A stretch of DNA of 64,000 nt from IMG/VR virus record IMGVR_UViG_3300035180_001778, positions 186,001 to 250,000 of that record; one strand, written 5' to 3'. The notes below the pieces were generated by a model, which was not told the DNA's origin, searched no databases, and saw only the letters and a program-made list of their open reading frames with translations. Every line of letters starts with the position of its first letter. Position 1 is the stretch's first letter. The position numbers and the translations under genes are program-made. Positions 11,341 through 64,000 of this stretch are shown here, in pieces.

Positions 11341-14310
11341 TCAGCCGAGGTTCTTGATGGTCTGGAGAATCGGCCGGATGTGGGGACGCATCGCCGGGTT
11401 CTTCGTGGCGAAGTCGATGATCGACGCCTTCAGAGCACGGTAGGAGGCAGCCTGCTTCTGCTGTTCCTGACCCTGGTCCTTGTCGTCCTTCTTCTCGTCC
11501 TTCTTGTCGTCCCCCTTGCCCTTCATGTGCTCAAGGAACTGGGGAGGCACCTGTCCACCCTGCTTCTGCTGTTCCTGGGACTGCTGAGCCTTCTCCTGTT
11601 GCTCTTCCTGAGCAACCTTGTCCGCGAGGACGATGAAGTCGTACGCGGCGGAGGGGTTGGTGTATGCCATTTCGGCGGCCTGCTTGCGGATTACGGCGGA
11701 TGCGCTCATGGGTTCTTCTCCTGTAGCAACATAAACGGATCCGTGAGCAGCGGCTTCATGGACCGTCAACAGCGTTTCGTCTTCGGACTTCCCAGCCAAC
11801 CGAGCGAGAAGGGAATTGTACGTCTTGTGGTCGAAACCCGCAGAGTACCTCCCGTCTTCGAGCGTTTGAATGGCGAGGTCAAGAGCGGCCCGTAGCTGGG
11901 TGTCCCGCTCAATTCCCTCCACAGACTTCGACAACACAGGGGCCTTGAGCCACTCCCTTGCCGATTTGAGGACCTTCGTGTAGTCCTTCTCCCCAAGGTC
12001 ACGATCGTGGACTTGATTCCACTTCGTATAGGGGGCGAAGCCCTCATGCCCCTTCGGGTAGGGGGCAACCCCCCAATAGACAGCCTGGCGGTTCTGAGGA
12101 CCCATCGACTTGCACCCTGAATAAGAAGAAAACGAGGCTGTCACCTGGCGATTTTGCTCGTCCCAGAGCCGTTCCCGCTCCTCTTCCTGGTCCTCACCCC
12201 CCAAACCATACCGGACCGGCTTCGCCGGGGGCTCAGGGAGTTCAGGTTCCGGAGGCAGCTCAGGAGCTTCAGGCAAGTCCAGATCCGGCGGAGGCTTCGG
12301 AGCCACGGGGGGCTTCGGCGGTTCCATGCCCTCTGTGGGGGACTCGCGATAGTCCCCCACAGAGGGCATGGCTTCTTGCACGAGCTTCTGGTACTTGACC
12401 TTCTCCTTGACGTACTTTCGGTACTCCTTGTCGAACGCCTTTGCCTGCTCCTTGTACTCGTCGATGGTCCCCTCATGCTTCGAGCGGAGCTTCTCGATGA
12501 TCTTGTCGTGCTTGTCGATGACCTTCTGAACAACCTTCTCGTACCGATCCATGGTCCGCGTCACGAGCTTCTCATGACGGGCAGTCTCAGAATCGAAGAG
12601 CTGGCGCTCGTACTTGTCGACATGGTTCCGAACGAAGGGGTACTTCTCCGGGTTGAGAGTCTGAACATGCTTCAGAATTCGGGTCCGAAATGCCCCCGCC
12701 GGATCCTGAGTAATAGCCGTTGGCGGGTATAGCCGAGAGCGATCCATGAGGAACCGGCTGCCGTCGACCACCCCACGAGCAATGTCCGTAGGCCCCTGAT
12801 GCTCCGAGATGTGCTCAGGAGAGGAGGGGTCTAGAAAACGAGCACGAGCCGTCTGGTAGTCGCGAGCCTGGAAGTAGGAGACCGCAAGACGCTCGGCTGC
12901 CGGGTTGCTCTTCGTGAACTCCAGGACGTTCTTGATCGTCCCGGGGGCGATCTTCTCATCCTTGCCTTCCGTCAGAACCTTCTGGAATACCTTCGCGGCC
13001 AGCTCCTTCGACTGGGCGTTGTCCTTCTCAGGGTCGACCTGCTCGCCTTCCTTCGGCGGCTTCTGCTGTAGAAGGAAGGCAGAGAGGAAGTCGGCCAACG
13101 CCGGGGGAGCCCCCAACGTGCGGGTGAGCGACCGGGTCACCTGGTCATGCGCAGCAAGGCTCAAAGCCACCGTTCGATTTCGGTGTTGAGCCCCAGCTTC
13201 AGCCTGCTCTTCAGGTGAAAGCTCGGTGAACGGGATCTCATTTCCAGCCTGGTCCTTCCCTGTCTTCGGAAGAGGGACCTTCGTGGGATCCGGCTGAAAC
13301 CAATGTTGGGCCTTCCCAACCAGCTTCTCCGCCGCCTTTGCCCCCATGTCACCCGAGCGGGCAGCGTGGTAGGTCGCAAGGATATCCGCCACATCATCCG
13401 GATGGAGGTTCGCATCGAGCAAGCCCTCCCGCATGGCACCGCGGGGAAGGTTTTCGAGAATGGCTGACTTCGCAGCCATTTGCTCCCACTCTTCCGCTTG
13501 ACGCCTCTTCGGCTCAGGGGTCTTGCCCTTTTCCTTCGGAGCCTCTTCAGGGGCCTTCTCAGGCTCTTTCTCGTCTTCCTTGGGCTCCTCGTTGCCCTCA
13601 TCAGGTTCCGGAGGCGTACCAGGGTCTTCCCCCTTCGGAGCCTCGTCAGGGACCTTCTCAGCTTCCGGGGCCTTGGGACTCTCGGGGTCTTTGGGCGCTT
13701 CTTGAGTCTTGGGGGGGTTCTTCTTCCCCTGGTTCAGGACCTTGACGAGCTGCCCAAGCGTCTTGACGCCTTCAGGAAGAGGGCGCCCCCGCATCATGAT
13801 CTCGGCGGGCAGATTGGGAGTGCTCTTCGCCACGTACCCGCCACCTTGCGAGGTCGGGTTGAGCAGGTCCTTGAAGACAGACGCCAGCTCGGGATCCGCC
13901 TTCGAGGCGTCCCATAGCTTCTTGCCCTGTGCGTAGGATTCGTGATCCTCGGGCGCCCATGCCGGTCCCGAGTCCCCCTCTTCGGGCAAGGAGTACTCGT
14001 CGGAGCGTTGCTTCAACGTCTCCGGCTTGATGTAGGTGGTCTCCCCTGTCTCCTTGCGGACAACCTTGACTTTCCCGTTGTCCTTCGCGGCTTCGAGGAA
14101 GCGATCGAGGATACGGCCCCCCAAAGAACCCTTGTAGTTGAGTGACAAGTCCTTGTCGGACTCCTTCAAGTCAGGGTCGGCTTCAGGACGCATGTCTTCC
14201 CGACGACGATCCCGCCGAGGAGGCTTGATCTTCGGGGCGGGACGGACAAGGCGCTCAGCCTCTTCCTCTTCCCGCTCATGCGTATCCTTCGTCGCCCAAT
14301 GCAACATCAC
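11341..14310 (-). CDS. Large multi-segment virion protein with Pro/Glu-rich linkers; possible internal starts
   Basis: 989-aa ORF; the internal ATG at 11709 has an AGGAGA Shine-Dalgarno. Confidence 0.65.
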   Translation of the reverse strand: MMLHWATKDTHEREEEEAERLVRPAPKIKPPRRDRRREDMRPEADPDLKESDKDLSLNYKGSLGGRILDRFLEAAKDNGKVKVVRKETGETTYIKPETLKQRSDEYSLPEEGDSGPAWAPEDHESYAQGKKLWDASKADPELASVFKDLLNPTSQGGGYVAKSTPNLPAEIMMRGRPLPEGVKTLGQLVKVLNQGKKNPPKTQEAPKDPESPKAPEAEKVPDEAPKGEDPGTPPEPDEGNEEPKEDEKEPEKAPEEAPKEKGKTPEPKRRQAEEWEQMAAKSAILENLPRGAMREGLLDANLHPDDVADILATYHAARSGDMGAKAAEKLVGKAQHWFQPDPTKVPLPKTGKDQAGNEIPFTELSPEEQAEAGAQHRNRTVALSLAAHDQVTRSLTRTLGAPPALADFLSAFLLQQKPPKEGEQVDPEKDNAQSKELAAKVFQKVLTEGKDEKIAPGTIKNVLEFTKSNPAAERLAVSYFQARDYQTARARFLDPSSPEHISEHQGPTDIARGVVDGSRFLMDRSRLYPPTAITQDPAGAFRTRILKHVQTLNPEKYPFVRNHVDKYERQLFDSETARHEKLVTRTMDRYEKVVQKVIDKHDKIIEKLRSKHEGTIDEYKEQAKAFDKEYRKYVKEKVKYQKLVQEAMPSVGDYRESPTEGMEPPKPPVAPKPPPDLDLPEAPELPPEPELPEPPAKPVRYGLGGEDQEEERERLWDEQNRQVTASFSSYSGCKSMGPQNRQAVYWGVAPYPKGHEGFAPYTKWNQVHDRDLGEKDYTKVLKSAREWLKAPVLSKSVEGIERDTQLRAALDLAIQTLEDGRYSAGFDHKTYNSLLARLAGKSEDETLLTVHEAAAHGSVYVATGEEPMSASAVIRKQAAEMAYTNPSAAYDFIVLADKVAQEEQQEKAQQSQEQQKQGGQVPPQFLEHMKGKGDDKKDEKKDDKDQGQEQQKQAASYRALKASIIDFATKNPAMRPHIRPILQTIKNLG

Positions 14311-58545: not shown

Positions 58546-58547
58546 AC

Positions 58548-58626
58548 AACCAAGGGCGGATTCGAACCGCCTACCAATGGCGACCCTTTTGGAGAGTGCC
58601 CACCGCACCATGCGATGTCCTTGGTT
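58548..58626 (-). ncRNA. Atypical tRNA-like RNA, identity unclear
   Basis: Acceptor AACCAAG/CUUGGUU, perfect T-arm GGCGG-UUCGAAU-CCGCC, long D-stem, irregular anticodon arm. Confidence 0.55.
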
Positions 58627-58632
58627 AAAAAA

Positions 58633-58695: not shown

Positions 58696-58829
58696 CGGGG
58701 TGCCCGATACCAACGGACAGATGGGACTCGAACCCACCTCGACCCCTACTCTAAGAAGTCCGAACACGTTGGAAATTCACAGGTCTGCTTTCCACCGCAG
58801 AGCAAGCTTTAATCGTGTTCAGTCTTCGG

Positions 58830-58914
58830 TCGCAAGCCAGGGAGTCGAACCCCGCTTCACATCGATCACCTTGGAAGGCTGGCCGCCCGGCCACTTTTCG
58901 TCGATGCCCTGCGA
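58830..58914 (-). ncRNA. tRNA-like RNA with acceptor-like stem, T-arm and branched arm, lacking a D-arm
   Basis: UCGCAGG/CUUGCGA closing stem and CGGGG-UUCGACU-CCCUG arm; begins right after a promoter motif. Confidence 0.5.
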
Positions 58915-59382: not shown

Positions 59383-59402
59383 CCTCGGGGTGTTTTTTCT
59401 TG

Positions 59403-59551
59403 AGGTTCGGGTTGAGCAGAGCACAACCTTCGTGCTGACTCGAACAGCCACACCCAACCTTGGGATACCGGACTCGAACCGGAATACAGAGGCTTATGCT
59501 GCCCCTGTGAGATACCCTTCTCTCCAGTTGTGCTCTGCTCAACCCGAACCT
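59403..59551 (-). ncRNA. Structured ncRNA D: perfect 25-bp stem enclosing tRNA-like arms
   Basis: 59403-59427 is the exact reverse complement of 59527-59551; two UUCGAGU T-loops inside. Confidence 0.6.
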
Positions 59552-59553
59552 AG

Positions 59554-59638
59554 CGGAAGATAGAGGCGTCGAACCCCGGCAGATAAATCCGCCACACCGT
59601 TTTCCAAACGGGCCTCGCTCCGAGCGAGAATATCTTCC
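59554..59638 (-). tRNA. tRNA-Ser(GGA), 8/4 fold
   Basis: Acceptor GGAAGAUA/UAUCUUCC, 6-bp D-stem, long variable arm. Confidence 0.8.
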
Positions 59639-59644
59639 AAAACG

Positions 59645-59762
59645 TGGGGGAGTGTCCAGGAATCGAACCTGGCTAGCTTTTCAGCAGGTCATTGAGAGAA
59701 GGAGCATGTGGCCACATGCTCAAACCTCATAAAAACCCTCGTCTTCCAAGACGAACACTCCC
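59645..59762 (-). ncRNA. tRNA-His-like RNA with greatly extended anticodon arm
   Basis: G-1:C73-type acceptor with CCA, perfect T-arm, 118 nt long. Confidence 0.55.
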
Positions 59763-59764
59763 TT

Positions 59765-59834
59765 TTTGCCGAGGGGAGTTGAACCCCCAACCTTCCCCTT
59801 GTGGGGGATGTTCTACCATTGGAACTACGGCTAC
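59765..59834 (-). pseudogene. Degenerate tRNA
   Basis: Intact D- and T-arms, only a 4-bp acceptor, 5-nt anticodon loop CACAA. Confidence 0.55.
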
Positions 59835-60186
59835 ATCTTGAGGGGGAAGCGACTCTGGCCTTACCCGCGGCCCCCAAGGGGGCGGGCCAGAGTCTTTTCA
59901 CCAAGGCCGGCGACCCTGGACTTCACGGCCCCGCTGCCTTTGGCAGATTCGGGGTAGTCTTACTCGCCTTCATCAGGGGAGCCCGTTTGAGTTTTCCTGT
60001 GGAGGGGTAACTCAGAAACCCAGGGATGTTTTGGACGGCCTTATCCCACCGAGCCGCCAAGCCTCGCATTGTAGCCCGGTATCACCCGGGGGCTTGGTCT
60101 ACGCGGTCTTTGTCCCGCATGGTCATCTGCATGTTTTCACTGTATCTCCTTCCGTCTCCTTTTCGTTTCAGCGTCTCGATGTAACC

Positions 60187-62064: not shown

Positions 62065-62081
62065 GGCTAGCCATACACCAG

Positions 62082-62168
62082 CGGAAGAAGGAGGAGTCGA
62101 ACCCCGGGCAGGTTTCCCCACCCACTTCGCTTTCCAAGCGAGCCCCGCTCCGAGCAGGAACATCTTCC
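62082..62168 (-). tRNA. tRNA-Ser(GGA), 8/4 fold (second copy)
   Basis: Acceptor GGAAGAUG/CUUCUUCC, T-stem GGGG/CCUC, long variable arm. Confidence 0.8.
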
Positions 62169-62964: not shown

Positions 62965-63525
62965 TCAGCCCGAGGCCTGGTTCTGCTGGAACCCCACGAG
63001 GAAGGGTTCCCAGAGGTCCGACTTGACGTCATGCCGGATCTGGGGAGCCCCCAACGGCAGAGTCTTCGGAGCGTGCGGATGCGCGATGCCCTTCCACGTT
63101 GCCGGGGGCTTGAGCCTCATGCCCGCTTCTGCCGGCGTGCGACCAGCCTTGCGGCCGTTGCACGGGTAGCAGCTCGTCACGATGTTCTCCCACACCGTCT
63201 TCCCACCCTGGCGCCTCGGAACCACATGGTCGTAGTTCAGGTCCTTCCGCGACTTGGTGGTGCCGCAGTAGCAGCACATGAAGTTGTCGCGAGCGAAGAC
63301 GTTCTCCCGTGAGAACTTGACGCCCCGCTTGCGATACGGGACGACCTTCTTGAGCATGGCGACCGCGGGCATCTTGACGACCTGCCCATCACGCTCGCAG
63401 AGGACCTCGTCGTACTCTTCCAGGATTTGGATTTTGCCGTTGCAGAAGTCGACCATTGCGACCTGCCACGGCACGACTCTGTGTGGGGCCATCCACGAGT
63501 TCAAGATCAGCGTATGCGAGTTCAT
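62965..63525 (-). CDS. HNH endonuclease (McrA-like)
   Basis: Start MNSH at 63525; FSRENVFARDNFMCCYCG, DHVVP and WENIVTSCYPCN motifs. Confidence 0.88.
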   Translation of the reverse strand: MNSHTLILNSWMAPHRVVPWQVAMVDFCNGKIQILEEYDEVLCERDGQVVKMPAVAMLKKVVPYRKRGVKFSRENVFARDNFMCCYCGTTKSRKDLNYDHVVPRRQGGKTVWENIVTSCYPCNGRKAGRTPAEAGMRLKPPATWKGIAHPHAPKTLPLGAPQIRHDVKSDLWEPFLVGFQQNQASG

Positions 63526-63577
63526 GGGACACCTTCGTGATGCGCCCCAACTTGGAGCGGCTACCGTTTCAATTGCA

Positions 63578-63654
63578 TGGTGCCCGCCGGGGGATTCGAA
63601 CCCCCAACCTTCCGTTTTTGAGGCGGACGCCGCTGCCAGTTGGGCTAGACGGGC
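63578..63654 (-). tRNA. tRNA-Leu(CAA) with short variable loop
   Basis: Acceptor GCCCGUC/GGCGGGC, A73, CCA, loop CUCAAAA, 5-nt variable region. Confidence 0.75.
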
Positions 63655-63708
63655 ATAATACAGGAAGGCCCTGGTTGCGATCAACCAAGGCCTTCCAATT
63701 CGAGAATT

Positions 63709-64000
63709 TGGAGCTGCCGGGAATCGAACCCGGGTCCGCAAAGCTTCCGTTCCGCTTTCGTTTACGTGCGTAGCCGCCATATCCCTGGCGGCTGGGTTCG
63801 CGGATTTGGCCGCGAACTATCTCGTCTGCTTGTCTCGAAGGGGTAGCCGCCGAGCACGCTTCCCCTTCCAGCCCTGTGGGTTGACACCGGAAATCCAGCT
63901 ACTAGGACGATCTTGCTGGCCGATGGTCACTACGCAGCCATCTGCATGGGGACGAGAGCGTTGTCGTTCGCAGGTATACGTCTCGATTGATTACGGCGGG
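63709..64000 (-). ncRNA. ssrA: tmRNA (5' end outside the window); tag ANDNALVPMQMAA
   Basis: 3' end GCGGACCCGGGUUCGAUUCCCGGCAGCUCCA; tag ORF 63971-63930 ends in AA followed by stop. Confidence 0.9.

What the first reader, a model, noticed from the sequence alone, without database searches (positions are those of the whole stretch)
59645..59762. His-identity acceptor with CCA on a 118-nt tRNA-like RNA with a palindromic giant anticodon arm
Seen: G-GGAGUGU/ACACUCC-C-CCA, a perfect T-arm, a long D-hairpin, and an anticodon arm of roughly 55 nt tipped by the perfect 20-nt palindrome GAGCATGTGGCCACATGCTC, which contains UGUGG (the His anticodon GUG). Known: G-1:C73 is the main HisRS identity element. 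Inference: it may be histidylated without decoding, may dimerise through the palindrome, or may be processed further.
Basis: partly seen in the sequence, partly recalled or inferred. Interest (0 to 1): 0.6.

Follow-up and report, generated by a model that had tools for sequence, protein, structure and literature searches.

The report
Non-decoding tRNA-shaped RNA in huge phage
A 350-kb phage carries, inside its tRNA gene cluster, a conserved 118-nt RNA gene that has the top half of a tRNA with a histidine-type end, but a rigid 53-nt helix where the anticodon arm should be, so it almost certainly cannot read codons and its role is unknown.

Summary
Every described feature is present: the G-1:C73 8-bp acceptor helix with encoded CCA, a 6-bp D stem with a 4-nt loop, a perfect T arm, a small GAAA-capped variable hairpin, and a 53-nt arm tipped by the 20-nt palindrome.

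The window belongs to a 350-kb IMG/VR phage with about 41 tRNAs and a tmRNA. One diverged orthologue exists (L009, 82% identical, no indels). Six base pairs change on both sides and stay paired: two in the acceptor stem and four in the long arm. The tRNA-like body is about 91% identical, like ordinary tRNAs of the two phages. The arm interior is about 67% identical but keeps its length and pairing. So this is a selected structured RNA, not a pseudogene.

It is not a decoder. No conserved 7-nt anticodon loop exists, with or without removing an insert. The GUG sits inside a helix. A genuine tRNA-His(GUG) with A73 lies elsewhere in the genome.

The His-type end is rare in this genome and conserved. 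However, the phage's own A73 tRNA-His suggests a host whose HisRS ignores G-1:C73, so histidylation is plausible but doubtful. No RNA data exist and the function is unknown.

The parts
59645..59762 (-). Whole tRNA-like RNA gene (118 nt, from G-1 to the encoded CCA)
   Evidence: Sequence. Fold z = -4.66. Orthologue at L009:11370-11487, 82% identical with no indels. Model R1 scores about 145 bits on the two copies only.
59755..59762 (-). 5' strand of the 8-pair acceptor helix (G-1 plus positions 1-7)
   Evidence: Pairs with 59648-59655. Two pairs change on both sides in L009 (G:C to A:U, U:A to C:G). G at -1 occurs in only 1 of 40 ordinary tRNAs.
59648..59655 (-). 3' strand of the acceptor helix, ending in C73
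   Evidence: C73 is rare in this genome.
59645..59647 (-). Encoded 3' CCA
   Evidence: Invariant CCCCCA in both phages. CCA is encoded in 14 of 40 tRNAs of the genome.
59739..59754 (-). D arm: 6-bp stem and 4-nt loop UGGA carrying the G18-G19 equivalents
   Evidence: Invariant between the two phages. The phage's tRNA-His(GUG) has the same 6-bp/4-nt design.
59686..59738 (-). 53-nt extended arm replacing the anticodon arm: closing helix 5 bp, internal loop, middle helix 5 bp (one mismatch in L009), internal loop, apical 8-9 bp hairpin
   Evidence: Pair probabilities 0.56-1.0 (mostly >=0.8) for the closing helix, against 0.0 for a short anticodon hairpin. It is 9-12 kcal/mol more stable than the five-way-junction alternative. 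Four pairs changed on both sides and one G.U to G:C change.
59702..59721 (-). Apical hairpin, equal to the 20-nt palindrome (8-bp stem, GGCC loop)
   Evidence: Three compensatory pairs and one G:C to G.U in L009. The tip UGUGGCCACA is invariant. It occurs once in the genome.
59676..59685 (-). Variable-arm hairpin GCU-GAAA-AGC (GNRA tetraloop)
   Evidence: Invariant between the two phages.
59656..59672 (-). T arm (5-bp stem, loop UUCGAUU)
   Evidence: One loop substitution in L009 and an invariant stem.

Best explanation
This is a gene for a non-decoding, tRNA-shaped small RNA.

Inferred biogenesis: it is transcribed with the phage's minus-strand tRNA cluster. It is matured like a tRNA, because its acceptor helix, D/T elbow and CCA end are those of a tRNA. 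RNase P is expected to cut 5' of G-1, because G-1 pairs with C73.

Shown by comparative analysis: in place of the 17-nt anticodon stem-loop it has a continuous, irregular 53-nt helix of about 19-20 bp. Its shape and length, but not its sequence, are under selection.

Inferred consequences: the RNA cannot place an anticodon in the ribosomal decoding centre. It most likely acts as a tRNA mimic that engages proteins recognising the acceptor end and elbow, while the long arm presents a conserved self-complementary tip (UGUGGCCACA) for a partner or for self-association. Its end carries the canonical His identity set, so a standard G-1-type HisRS would probably charge it. Whether its natural host does so is uncertain.
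For: - Structure: z = -4.66. The same fold is predicted independently for the orthologue, z = -4.55.
- Covariation: six pairs are compensated, two in the acceptor helix and four in the long arm. 98.7% of cells are paired, and slid controls give 0-1.
- Long arm: it is 9-12 kcal/mol more stable than a short anticodon hairpin, whose pairs have probability 0.0.
- Constraint: the body has 7 differences in 75 nt (about 91% identical), against a median of 92% for 23 orthologous tRNA/tmRNA pairs. The arm interior has 14 differences in 43 nt and no indel.
- Retention: the element is kept while the neighbouring tRNA-Ser unit is present in one phage only.
- Population: it is identical in four metagenomes and no insert-free form was seen.
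- No decoding loop: the candidate loop UUUAUGA becomes UAUAGGC in L009, losing U33 and changing the triplet.
- Not needed for His decoding: a real tRNA-His(GUG) is at genome 257253-257324. L009 has its own tRNA-Ile(UAU).
- Acceptor end: G-1 plus C73 plus CCA is rare here and conserved.
- Precedents: T4 species 1 RNA in the T4 tRNA cluster has a perfect T arm plus extra hairpins. G-1 irregular tRNAs are charged by HisRS but not used for translation (PMC5389517).
Against: - Only two distinct sequences exist, so the covariation cannot be tested statistically.
- No RNA-level evidence of expression, ends or size is available.
- No function is shown and no partner is identified.
- The D arm, T stem, V hairpin and the G-1:C73 pair do not vary, so they are uninformative.
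- The middle helix has one broken pair in L009, and its register is ambiguous because of the UCUCUC repeat.
- The phage record is about 73% complete, so absences of enzymes are weak evidence.
Confidence: 0.6

Rival explanations
1. One reading: the RNA is histidylated by the host HisRS through G-1:C73 and serves as a non-decoding His acceptor (donor, sink or sensor). This is a sub-case of the best explanation.
For: G-1:C73 plus CCA is present, rare in the genome and conserved. In bacteria with G-1-type HisRS, C73 is specific to tRNA-His, and minihelices and viral tRNA-like structures are histidylated (PMC3064791). Irregular G-1 tRNAs with a non-His anticodon were charged by E. coli HisRS better than tRNA-His (PMC5389517).
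Against: The phage's own tRNA-His has A73, and its Ser tRNAs are of the 8/4 type. This is the pattern reported for phages of alpha-proteobacteria, whose tRNA-His lacks G-1. In that clade HisRS depends on the anticodon, A73 and U72, and charges G-1:C73 tRNA more than 250-fold worse. No HisRS or Thg1 is encoded in the record. The host is not identified.
Confidence: 0.25
2. It is a precursor of a decoding tRNA. The middle of the long arm is an intervening sequence that is cut out and the halves are ligated. ARAGORN at a lowered threshold calls tRNA-Ile(UAU) with a 36-nt intron.
For: ARAGORN with -i and -ps90 makes this call. The window copy happens to read UUUAUGA right after the closing helix. 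This phage lacks the canonical tRNA-Ile(UAU) that L009 has.
Against: - The putative loop is UAUAGGC in L009, with no U33 and a different triplet, and no other excision gives a conserved 7-nt loop.
- U34 of the 'anticodon' is in a covarying pair, 34:70.
- There is no bulge-helix-bulge geometry.
- 43 nt is far too short for a group I intron.
- No tRNA-splicing endonuclease or RtcB is found.
- The insert's helices are maintained by four compensatory pairs.
Confidence: 0.07
3. It is a decaying tRNA gene hit by an insertion: a pseudogene with no function of its own.
For: Standard tRNA finders reject it. The cluster gains and loses tRNA units and holds several other irregular tRNA-like bodies.
Against: Six compensated pairs against one broken pair. 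No indel in 118 nt at 18% divergence. The body is as conserved as working tRNAs. The element is retained in both lineages while a neighbouring tRNA is not.
Confidence: 0.08
4. The palindrome works at the DNA level, as an operator, a recombination site or a terminator, and only happens to lie in a tRNA-like gene.
For: The same 23-nt stretch occurs in an unrelated viral contig just downstream of a tyrosine-integrase gene (L007). Symmetric sites would also evolve symmetrically.
Against: In L009 one pair is G.U, which keeps an RNA helix but breaks DNA symmetry. The palindrome is the tip of a longer covarying RNA arm embedded in a conserved tRNA body. It occurs once in the genome. No T-run follows it.
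Confidence: 0.04

Closest known systems
Irregular G-1 tRNAs in polycistronic tRNA-like clusters (Mukai et al. 2017, Nucleic Acids Res, PMC5389517)
   Same: Non-standard tRNA-like genes packed among other tRNA genes. [quoted passage not shown]
   Different: Those RNAs keep a normal anticodon arm (GGU anticodon), often have an 8/4 acceptor/T geometry, and come from acidobacterial loci near toxin-antitoxin genes. Here the anticodon arm is replaced by a 53-nt helix, the geometry is 7/5 plus G-1, and the gene is in a huge phage. No sequence homology was shown.
Phage T4 species 1 RNA (rnaC) and species 2 RNA (rnaD), stable RNAs of the T4 tRNA cluster
   Same: Small stable RNAs of 139 and 119 nt, annotated without a known function inside a phage tRNA gene cluster. 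rnaC has a perfect T arm next to its 3' end plus extra long hairpins, z = -4.57.
   Different: There is no detectable homology: model R1 gives 19.7 bits, the same as ordinary tRNAs. The arrangement of helices differs, rnaD shows no tRNA shape, and neither has a His-type end.
Bacterial tRNA-His (G-1 type)
   Same: G-1:C73 pair, 7-bp acceptor stem, CCA, T arm, and an elbow-forming GG in the D loop.
   Different: There is no 7-nt anticodon loop and no accessible GUG. The D loop has 4 nt. The phage's real tRNA-His is a different gene with A73.
tRNA-Sec and allo-tRNAs (8/5, 8/4, 9/3 cloverleaves)
   Same: A 13-bp acceptor/T branch if the first G is counted, a 6-bp D stem with a 4-nt loop, and an extra arm in the variable region. 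Neighbouring genes in the window are 8/4 tRNA-Ser types.
   Different: No UCA or other conserved anticodon. The variable arm has only 3 bp. No Rfam tRNA-Sec hit was found. The CCA follows the eighth pair directly, which fits G-1:C73 better than an 8-bp stem plus a discriminator base.
tmRNA and viral tRNA-like structures (e.g. histidine-accepting TLS of plant RNA viruses)
   Same: A tRNA-like acceptor/T domain joined to a non-tRNA module. TLS-His elements are charged without decoding (cites this).
   Different: It is not at a genome 3' end. The short reading frame in the arm is not conserved. There is no G3:U70. A genuine tmRNA lies 4 kb away.

Membership tests
Canonical elongator tRNA (Rfam RF00005) | Acceptor stem of 7 bp and T arm with a UUCRANY loop | tested here: met
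   Two acceptor pairs covary.
Canonical elongator tRNA (Rfam RF00005) | 5-bp anticodon stem closing a 7-nt loop with U33 and a conserved anticodon | tested here: not met
   The loop candidate is not conserved. The short hairpin has pair probability 0.0 and is 9-12 kcal/mol worse.
Canonical elongator tRNA (Rfam RF00005) | Score above the family threshold, or a call by a tRNA finder at default settings | tested here: not met
   No RF00005 match even at E<=10 in a 1-kb search. ARAGORN default makes no call.
Bacterial tRNA-His, G-1 type | Encoded G-1 paired with C73, followed by CCA | tested here: met
Bacterial tRNA-His, G-1 type | GUG anticodon in the anticodon loop | tested here: not met
   GUG lies in the apical helix of the long arm.
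Bacterial tRNA-His, G-1 type | RNase P leaves G-1; the RNA is charged by HisRS | not testable with these tools
   No RNA runs are available. This needs biochemistry.
tRNA-Sec / allo-tRNA | 8/5, 8/4 or 9/3 acceptor-T branch with an unpaired discriminator base | tested here: inconclusive
   8+5 pairs are present, but CCA follows the eighth pair directly. The outermost pair does not vary.
tRNA-Sec / allo-tRNA | Functional anticodon loop and long variable arm; Rfam RF01852 match | tested here: not met
   No conserved loop. The V hairpin has 3 bp. There is no RF01852 hit on the element, although its neighbours are hit.
Intron-containing tRNA (archaeal/eukaryal type) | Bulge-helix-bulge at the exon-intron junctions, a splicing endonuclease and a ligase | tested here: not met
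   The internal loops are 4x2 and 3x4 nt, not 3-nt bulges flanking a 4-bp helix. PF01974 and PF01139 are absent from the record (record about 73% complete).
Group I intron in a bacterial or phage tRNA | Catalytic core of about 200 nt or more inserted in the anticodon loop | tested here: not met
   The extra sequence is about 43 nt. No Rfam intron match was found.
tmRNA | tRNA-Ala-like domain plus a conserved tag reading frame | tested here: not met
   The 13-codon frame in the arm loses its AUG, and 7 of 13 residues differ in L009. The real tmRNA is at 63708 onward.
T4 species 1 RNA (rnaC) | Sequence or structure homology to rnaC | tested here: not met
   R1 scores 19.7 bits on rnaC, within the range of ordinary tRNAs.
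Bacterial Y RNA (YrlA-type) | tRNA-like module distal to a long stem formed by the 5' and 3' ends | tested here: not met
   Here the ends form the acceptor stem and the long helix is distal. There is no Rfam hit.

The most novel reading that the evidence does not exclude
The element, together with the other over-long tRNA-like genes of this phage (including a second one with G-1:C73), represents a new class of phage-encoded tRNA mimics. Such an RNA would be matured by tRNA enzymes and possibly aminoacylated. Its elongated arm and self-complementary tip would let it dimerise or dock on a partner. It could then act as a decoy or sponge for host tRNA-binding factors such as tRNA-targeting defence nucleases or synthetases, or as a non-ribosomal aminoacyl donor.
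Probability: 0.15. Interest if true: 0.75.

Novelty: new variant of a known kind. Interest (0 to 1): 0.5.

Why it matters
Huge phages carry large tRNA sets, usually explained as codon supply or as escape from host tRNA-cleaving defences. A conserved RNA that keeps everything needed for tRNA processing and acceptor-end recognition, yet has lost the ability to decode, points to uses of the tRNA shape beyond translation.

It also shows that standard tRNA and Rfam annotation misses a string of structured RNA genes in such clusters. At least three conserved non-standard RNAs lie within 600 nt here.

If the RNA is charged with histidine, it would be a natural aminoacylated non-decoding RNA in a phage. 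If it is not, the paired discriminator base could be a device that blocks charging. Either outcome can be tested with a simple transcript.

Tried and rejected
- Homologue hunts. I ran exact and gapped patterns from the T arm/acceptor, the palindrome, the D arm plus V hairpin, the arm core and the D arm alone. In IMG/VR these returned only the near-identical phage L006, plus one unrelated palindrome in L007. In JGI metagenomes there were four chance hits inside coding sequence. In 185k species genomes there were zero hits for one pattern, and six chance hits inside long ORFs with no T loop for the other. Megablast and blastn against GenBank phages found nothing.
- Model R1 found no paralogue in the phage and no homologue in the 45%-related huge-phage loci L010-L012.
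- Mini-ORF idea. The arm of the window copy reads AUG plus 12 codons plus UGA. In L009 the AUG is lost and 7 of 13 residues differ, following the compensatory RNA changes. I rejected it.
- The terminator-like hit (D hairpin plus U-run) is not conserved: the U-run is broken in L009.
- GAAA tetraloop/receptor idea: the receptor-like UAUG...CUCAAUG in the window copy is not conserved in L009.
- Polymorphism mining: the four metagenomes carry identical copies, so they gave no extra variants.
- Host identification through GroEL and clamp-loader tblastn gave no close cultured phage.
- The supplement of PMC5389517 is not held.
- The large representative protein search, structure prediction and complex prediction were not used, because no protein question was open.

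Full report
WHAT IS THERE. The T-loop motif reads on the minus strand, so the element runs from window 59762 down to 59645. In the 5' to 3' direction it has these parts:
- an 8-pair terminal helix (GGGAGUGU with ACACUCCC);
- with no linker, a 6-bp hairpin with loop UGGA in the D-arm position;
- a 53-nt arm;
- a 3-bp hairpin capped by GAAA in the variable-arm position;
- a textbook T arm (CCAGG-UUCGAUU-CCUGG);
- the 3' strand of the terminal helix, followed directly by CCA.

The 20-nt palindrome (59702-59721) is the tip of the long arm. The fold is far more stable than shuffles (-50.8 kcal/mol, z = -4.66). ARAGORN at default settings and Rfam do not call it. ARAGORN with short introns allowed and a lowered threshold calls tRNA-Ile(UAU) with a 36-nt intron.

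CONTEXT. The window is part of a single 350,469-bp IMG/VR virus record with a CheckV completeness of about 73%. This huge phage carries 40 ARAGORN tRNAs and a tmRNA. All but one of these genes lie on the minus strand between 242.6 and 265.7 kb. Nearby genes encode an R2K ATP-grasp protein, a 3'-5' exoribonuclease-like protein, an AlkB-type 2OG oxygenase, GroEL, clamp-loader subunits and an HNH endonuclease. No ORF of note overlaps the element. The phage occurs in four sediment or microbial-mat DNA metagenomes with an identical copy of the element and no insert-free form. No RNA runs hold it.

COMPARATIVE EVIDENCE. The neighbouring R2K protein has an 87%-identical relative on a 24.5-kb JGI contig (L009). 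That contig is syntenic and carries 32 tRNAs and the same tmRNA. L009 holds an orthologue of the element at 11370-11487, with 21 substitutions in 118 nt and no indel.
- Acceptor helix: two pairs change on both sides (G:C to A:U, U:A to C:G).
- Apical hairpin: three pairs change on both sides, and one G:C becomes G.U.
- Closing helix of the long arm: one G.U becomes G:C.
- Middle helix: RNAalifold places it at 34-38 with 66-70 and finds a sixth compensated pair there (U:A to G:C).
- Controls: slid controls give 0-1 compensated pairs, and 98.7% of cells are paired.
- Invariant parts: the D arm, the V hairpin, the T stem, the tip UGUGGCCACA, a UUCUCUC run and the CCCCCA end.

Divergence is informative. 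The tRNA-like body has 7 changes in 75 nt (about 91% identical). That is close to the median of 92% (range 71-100%) for 23 orthologous canonical tRNA/tmRNA pairs of the two phages. The interior of the arm has 14 changes in 43 nt, yet it keeps its length and pairing. A neighbouring tRNA-Ser unit is present in one phage only, so the element is retained while whole units turn over. This pattern argues for a selected structured RNA and against a pseudogene. Two sequences do not allow a statistical covariation test.

IT DOES NOT DECODE.
- The only 7-nt stretch that resembles an anticodon loop, UUUAUGA, becomes UAUAGGC in L009. U33 is lost and the triplet changes. Its last base sits in the covarying 34:70 pair.
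- A short anticodon hairpin (25-29 with 37-41) would consist of five G.U pairs in the window copy. It is 9-12 kcal/mol less stable than the long arm and has pair probability 0.0.
- No way of excising part of the arm gives a conserved 7-nt loop in both copies.
- There is no bulge-helix-bulge geometry, the extra 43 nt are far too short for a group I intron, and no splicing endonuclease or RtcB is found in the record.
- The GUG inside the palindrome is paired (pair probabilities 0.87-1.0). It lies about 14 bp further from the elbow than an anticodon would.
- The 13-codon reading frame in the window copy is not conserved.

THE HIS QUESTION. The acceptor end is unusual for this genome. G at -1 occurs in 1 of 40 ordinary tRNAs (T is usual), C73 in at most 5, and CCA is encoded in 14. 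Only two tRNA-like bodies combine G-1 and C73: this element and another uncalled, 108-nt tRNA-like gene at genome 264901-265008. In bacteria with standard HisRS, G-1 and C73 are the main identity elements, and acceptor minihelices and viral tRNA-like structures are histidylated (PMC3064791). Mukai et al. showed that irregular G-1 tRNAs with a Thr anticodon are charged by E. coli HisRS better than tRNA-His, yet do not insert His.

Against it, the phage has a genuine tRNA-His(GUG) at genome 257253-257324 (Rfam 50.8 bits, ARAGORN misses it), and that tRNA has A73. The Ser-type genes in the window have the 8/4 geometry: for example, 59555-59638 has an 8-bp acceptor and a 4-bp T stem. Mukai et al. 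report exactly this combination, 8/4 tRNA-Ser plus a tRNA-His lacking G-1 with A73, for phages of alpha-proteobacteria. In that clade HisRS relies on the anticodon, A73 and U72, and charges E. coli G-1:C73 tRNA-His more than 250-fold worse. The phage record encodes no HisRS or Thg1. The host inference is indirect, because I could not identify the host. I therefore rate histidylation in the natural host at about one in four. An alternative reading is that a paired discriminator base in such a host keeps the RNA uncharged.

DIMERISATION. Any perfect hairpin with a self-complementary tetraloop is a palindrome, so the palindrome by itself adds nothing beyond 'hairpin with a GGCC loop'. Still, the 10-nt tip is invariant while three of the five pairs below it have changed. 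In silico, an extended-duplex homodimer is about 21 kcal/mol more stable than two monomers in both orthologues. That is true of all such hairpins and says nothing about kinetics. The idea is allowed but untested. The same 23-nt stretch occurs in an unrelated 15-kb viral contig just downstream of an integrase gene (L007). I take that as coincidence or an unrelated hairpin.

COMPARISON WITH KNOWN THINGS. The element fails the tests for canonical tRNA, tRNA-Sec/allo-tRNA, intron-containing tRNA, tmRNA and YrlA-type Y RNA (see the membership table). It works most like two known oddities:
- The irregular G-1 tRNAs of Mukai et al. These have a His-type end and do not decode, but they keep a normal anticodon arm.
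- The stable species 1 RNA (rnaC) of the phage T4 tRNA cluster. This is annotated as a small stable RNA. It has a perfect T arm plus extra hairpins, but no homology: R1 scores 19.7 bits, like any tRNA.

I found no description of a tRNA body whose anticodon arm is replaced by a conserved helix of about 20 bp. The library is not exhaustive.

BROADER PICTURE. The element is one of a string of non-standard RNA genes in this cluster.
- A 24-26-bp stem encloses two T-arm-like hairpins at 59396-59552, with nine compensated pairs.
- A helix-rich RNA lies at 59836-59940, with three compensated pairs.
- A 176-nt tRNA-like body lies at 58714-58889, about 90% conserved in L009.
- Two tRNA-like genes with normal anticodon arms carry variable regions of about 60 nt, at genome 257434-257568 and 257700-257829.
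- Standard annotation misses all of these.

VERDICT. The element is best described as a conserved, non-decoding tRNA-shaped small RNA of a huge phage with a His-type acceptor end and an elongated arm. It is a new variant of the known but poorly understood kind 'irregular or stable tRNA-like RNAs in tRNA clusters'. Its function is unknown, and expression, ends, charging and dimerisation all remain to be tested.

Noticed in passing
window 59396-59552 (-); orthologue L009:11489-11643: A conserved structured RNA directly downstream. A closing stem of about 26 bp encloses two T-arm-like hairpins (CCGGUUCGAGUCCGG and GCUGUUCGAGUCAGC). Nine pairs change on both sides between the two phages. There is no Rfam match.
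   Followed up: partly
window 59836-59940 (-); orthologue L009:11187-11294: A conserved helix-rich RNA segment upstream of the tRNA at 59764-59834. Three pairs are compensated. Some motifs (GAAGUCCAGGG, GCGGGUAAG) vaguely recall RNase P RNA, but no Rfam hit was found.
   Followed up: partly
window 59764-59834 (-): A tRNA (Rfam 37.3 bits) that abuts the element with a 1-nt spacer and has an abnormally short anticodon loop region (CCCCCACAAGGGG). The L009 orthologue reads CCCCUCGGAAGGGG, and ARAGORN calls it Ser(GGA). The anticodon is not conserved here either.
   Followed up: partly
window 59555-59638 (-): An 8/4-type tRNA-Ser(GGA), with an 8-bp acceptor and a 4-bp T stem. It looks like a second Ser(GGA) gene beside the one at 62081-62168, and it is cleanly absent from L009. 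tRNA units are gained and lost in this cluster.
   Followed up: partly
window 58546-58627 (-): The 'tRNA-Trp(CCA)' has a 9-pair acceptor helix, a 6-bp D stem and an extra arm, and matches the tRNA-Sec model at 40.6 bits. It looks like an allo-tRNA-type cloverleaf with a Trp anticodon. It is 94% conserved in L009.
   Followed up: no
window 58714-58889 (-) (genome 244714-244889): A 176-nt body with a perfect acceptor stem and T arm that also contains an internal second T-arm-like hairpin. It is about 90% conserved in L009 (11645-11848).
   Followed up: no
genome G000:C1:257253-257324 (-) = L018:7253-7324: A genuine tRNA-His(GUG), Rfam 50.8 bits, with A73, a 6-bp D stem and a 4-nt D loop. ARAGORN default misses it. 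A73 suggests a host with the deltaG-1 type of HisRS.
   Followed up: yes
genome G000:C1:257434-257568 and 257700-257829 (-): Two uncalled tRNA-like genes of 135 and 130 nt. They have normal-looking anticodon arms (loops CUUCCAC and CACAUAA) but variable regions of about 60-66 nt containing several hairpins.
   Followed up: partly
genome G000:C1:264901-265008 (-): The only other body in the genome with G at -1 and C73. It is a 108-nt uncalled tRNA-like gene with an enlarged D region and a GCAA-capped hairpin. Its 3' tail is ACA rather than CCA. It may belong to the same functional class as the finding.
   Followed up: partly
genome G000:C1:302161-302233 (+): A 73-nt tRNA with anticodon UCA, which ARAGORN labels SeC. 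It lies far from the cluster and on the other strand. It could be an opal-suppressor-type tRNA.
   Followed up: no
L007:5286-5308 (IMGVR_UViG_2861259193_000002): The same 23-nt palindromic stretch as the tip of the long arm, found in an unrelated 15-kb viral contig about 60 nt downstream of a tyrosine-integrase gene. It is either chance or a shared hairpin/binding site.
   Followed up: partly
window 62965-63780 (-) and 63708-64000 (-): An HNH endonuclease ORF lies inside the tRNA cluster and overlaps the start of a one-piece tmRNA gene (tag ANDNALVPMQMAA). This recalls the homing endonuclease segB in the T4 tRNA cluster.
   Followed up: no
genome G000:C1:257042-257114 (-) = L018:7042-7114: A near-perfect long hairpin between tRNA genes. 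It gives spurious microRNA-family matches in Rfam (mir-145, 37.6 bits).
   Followed up: no
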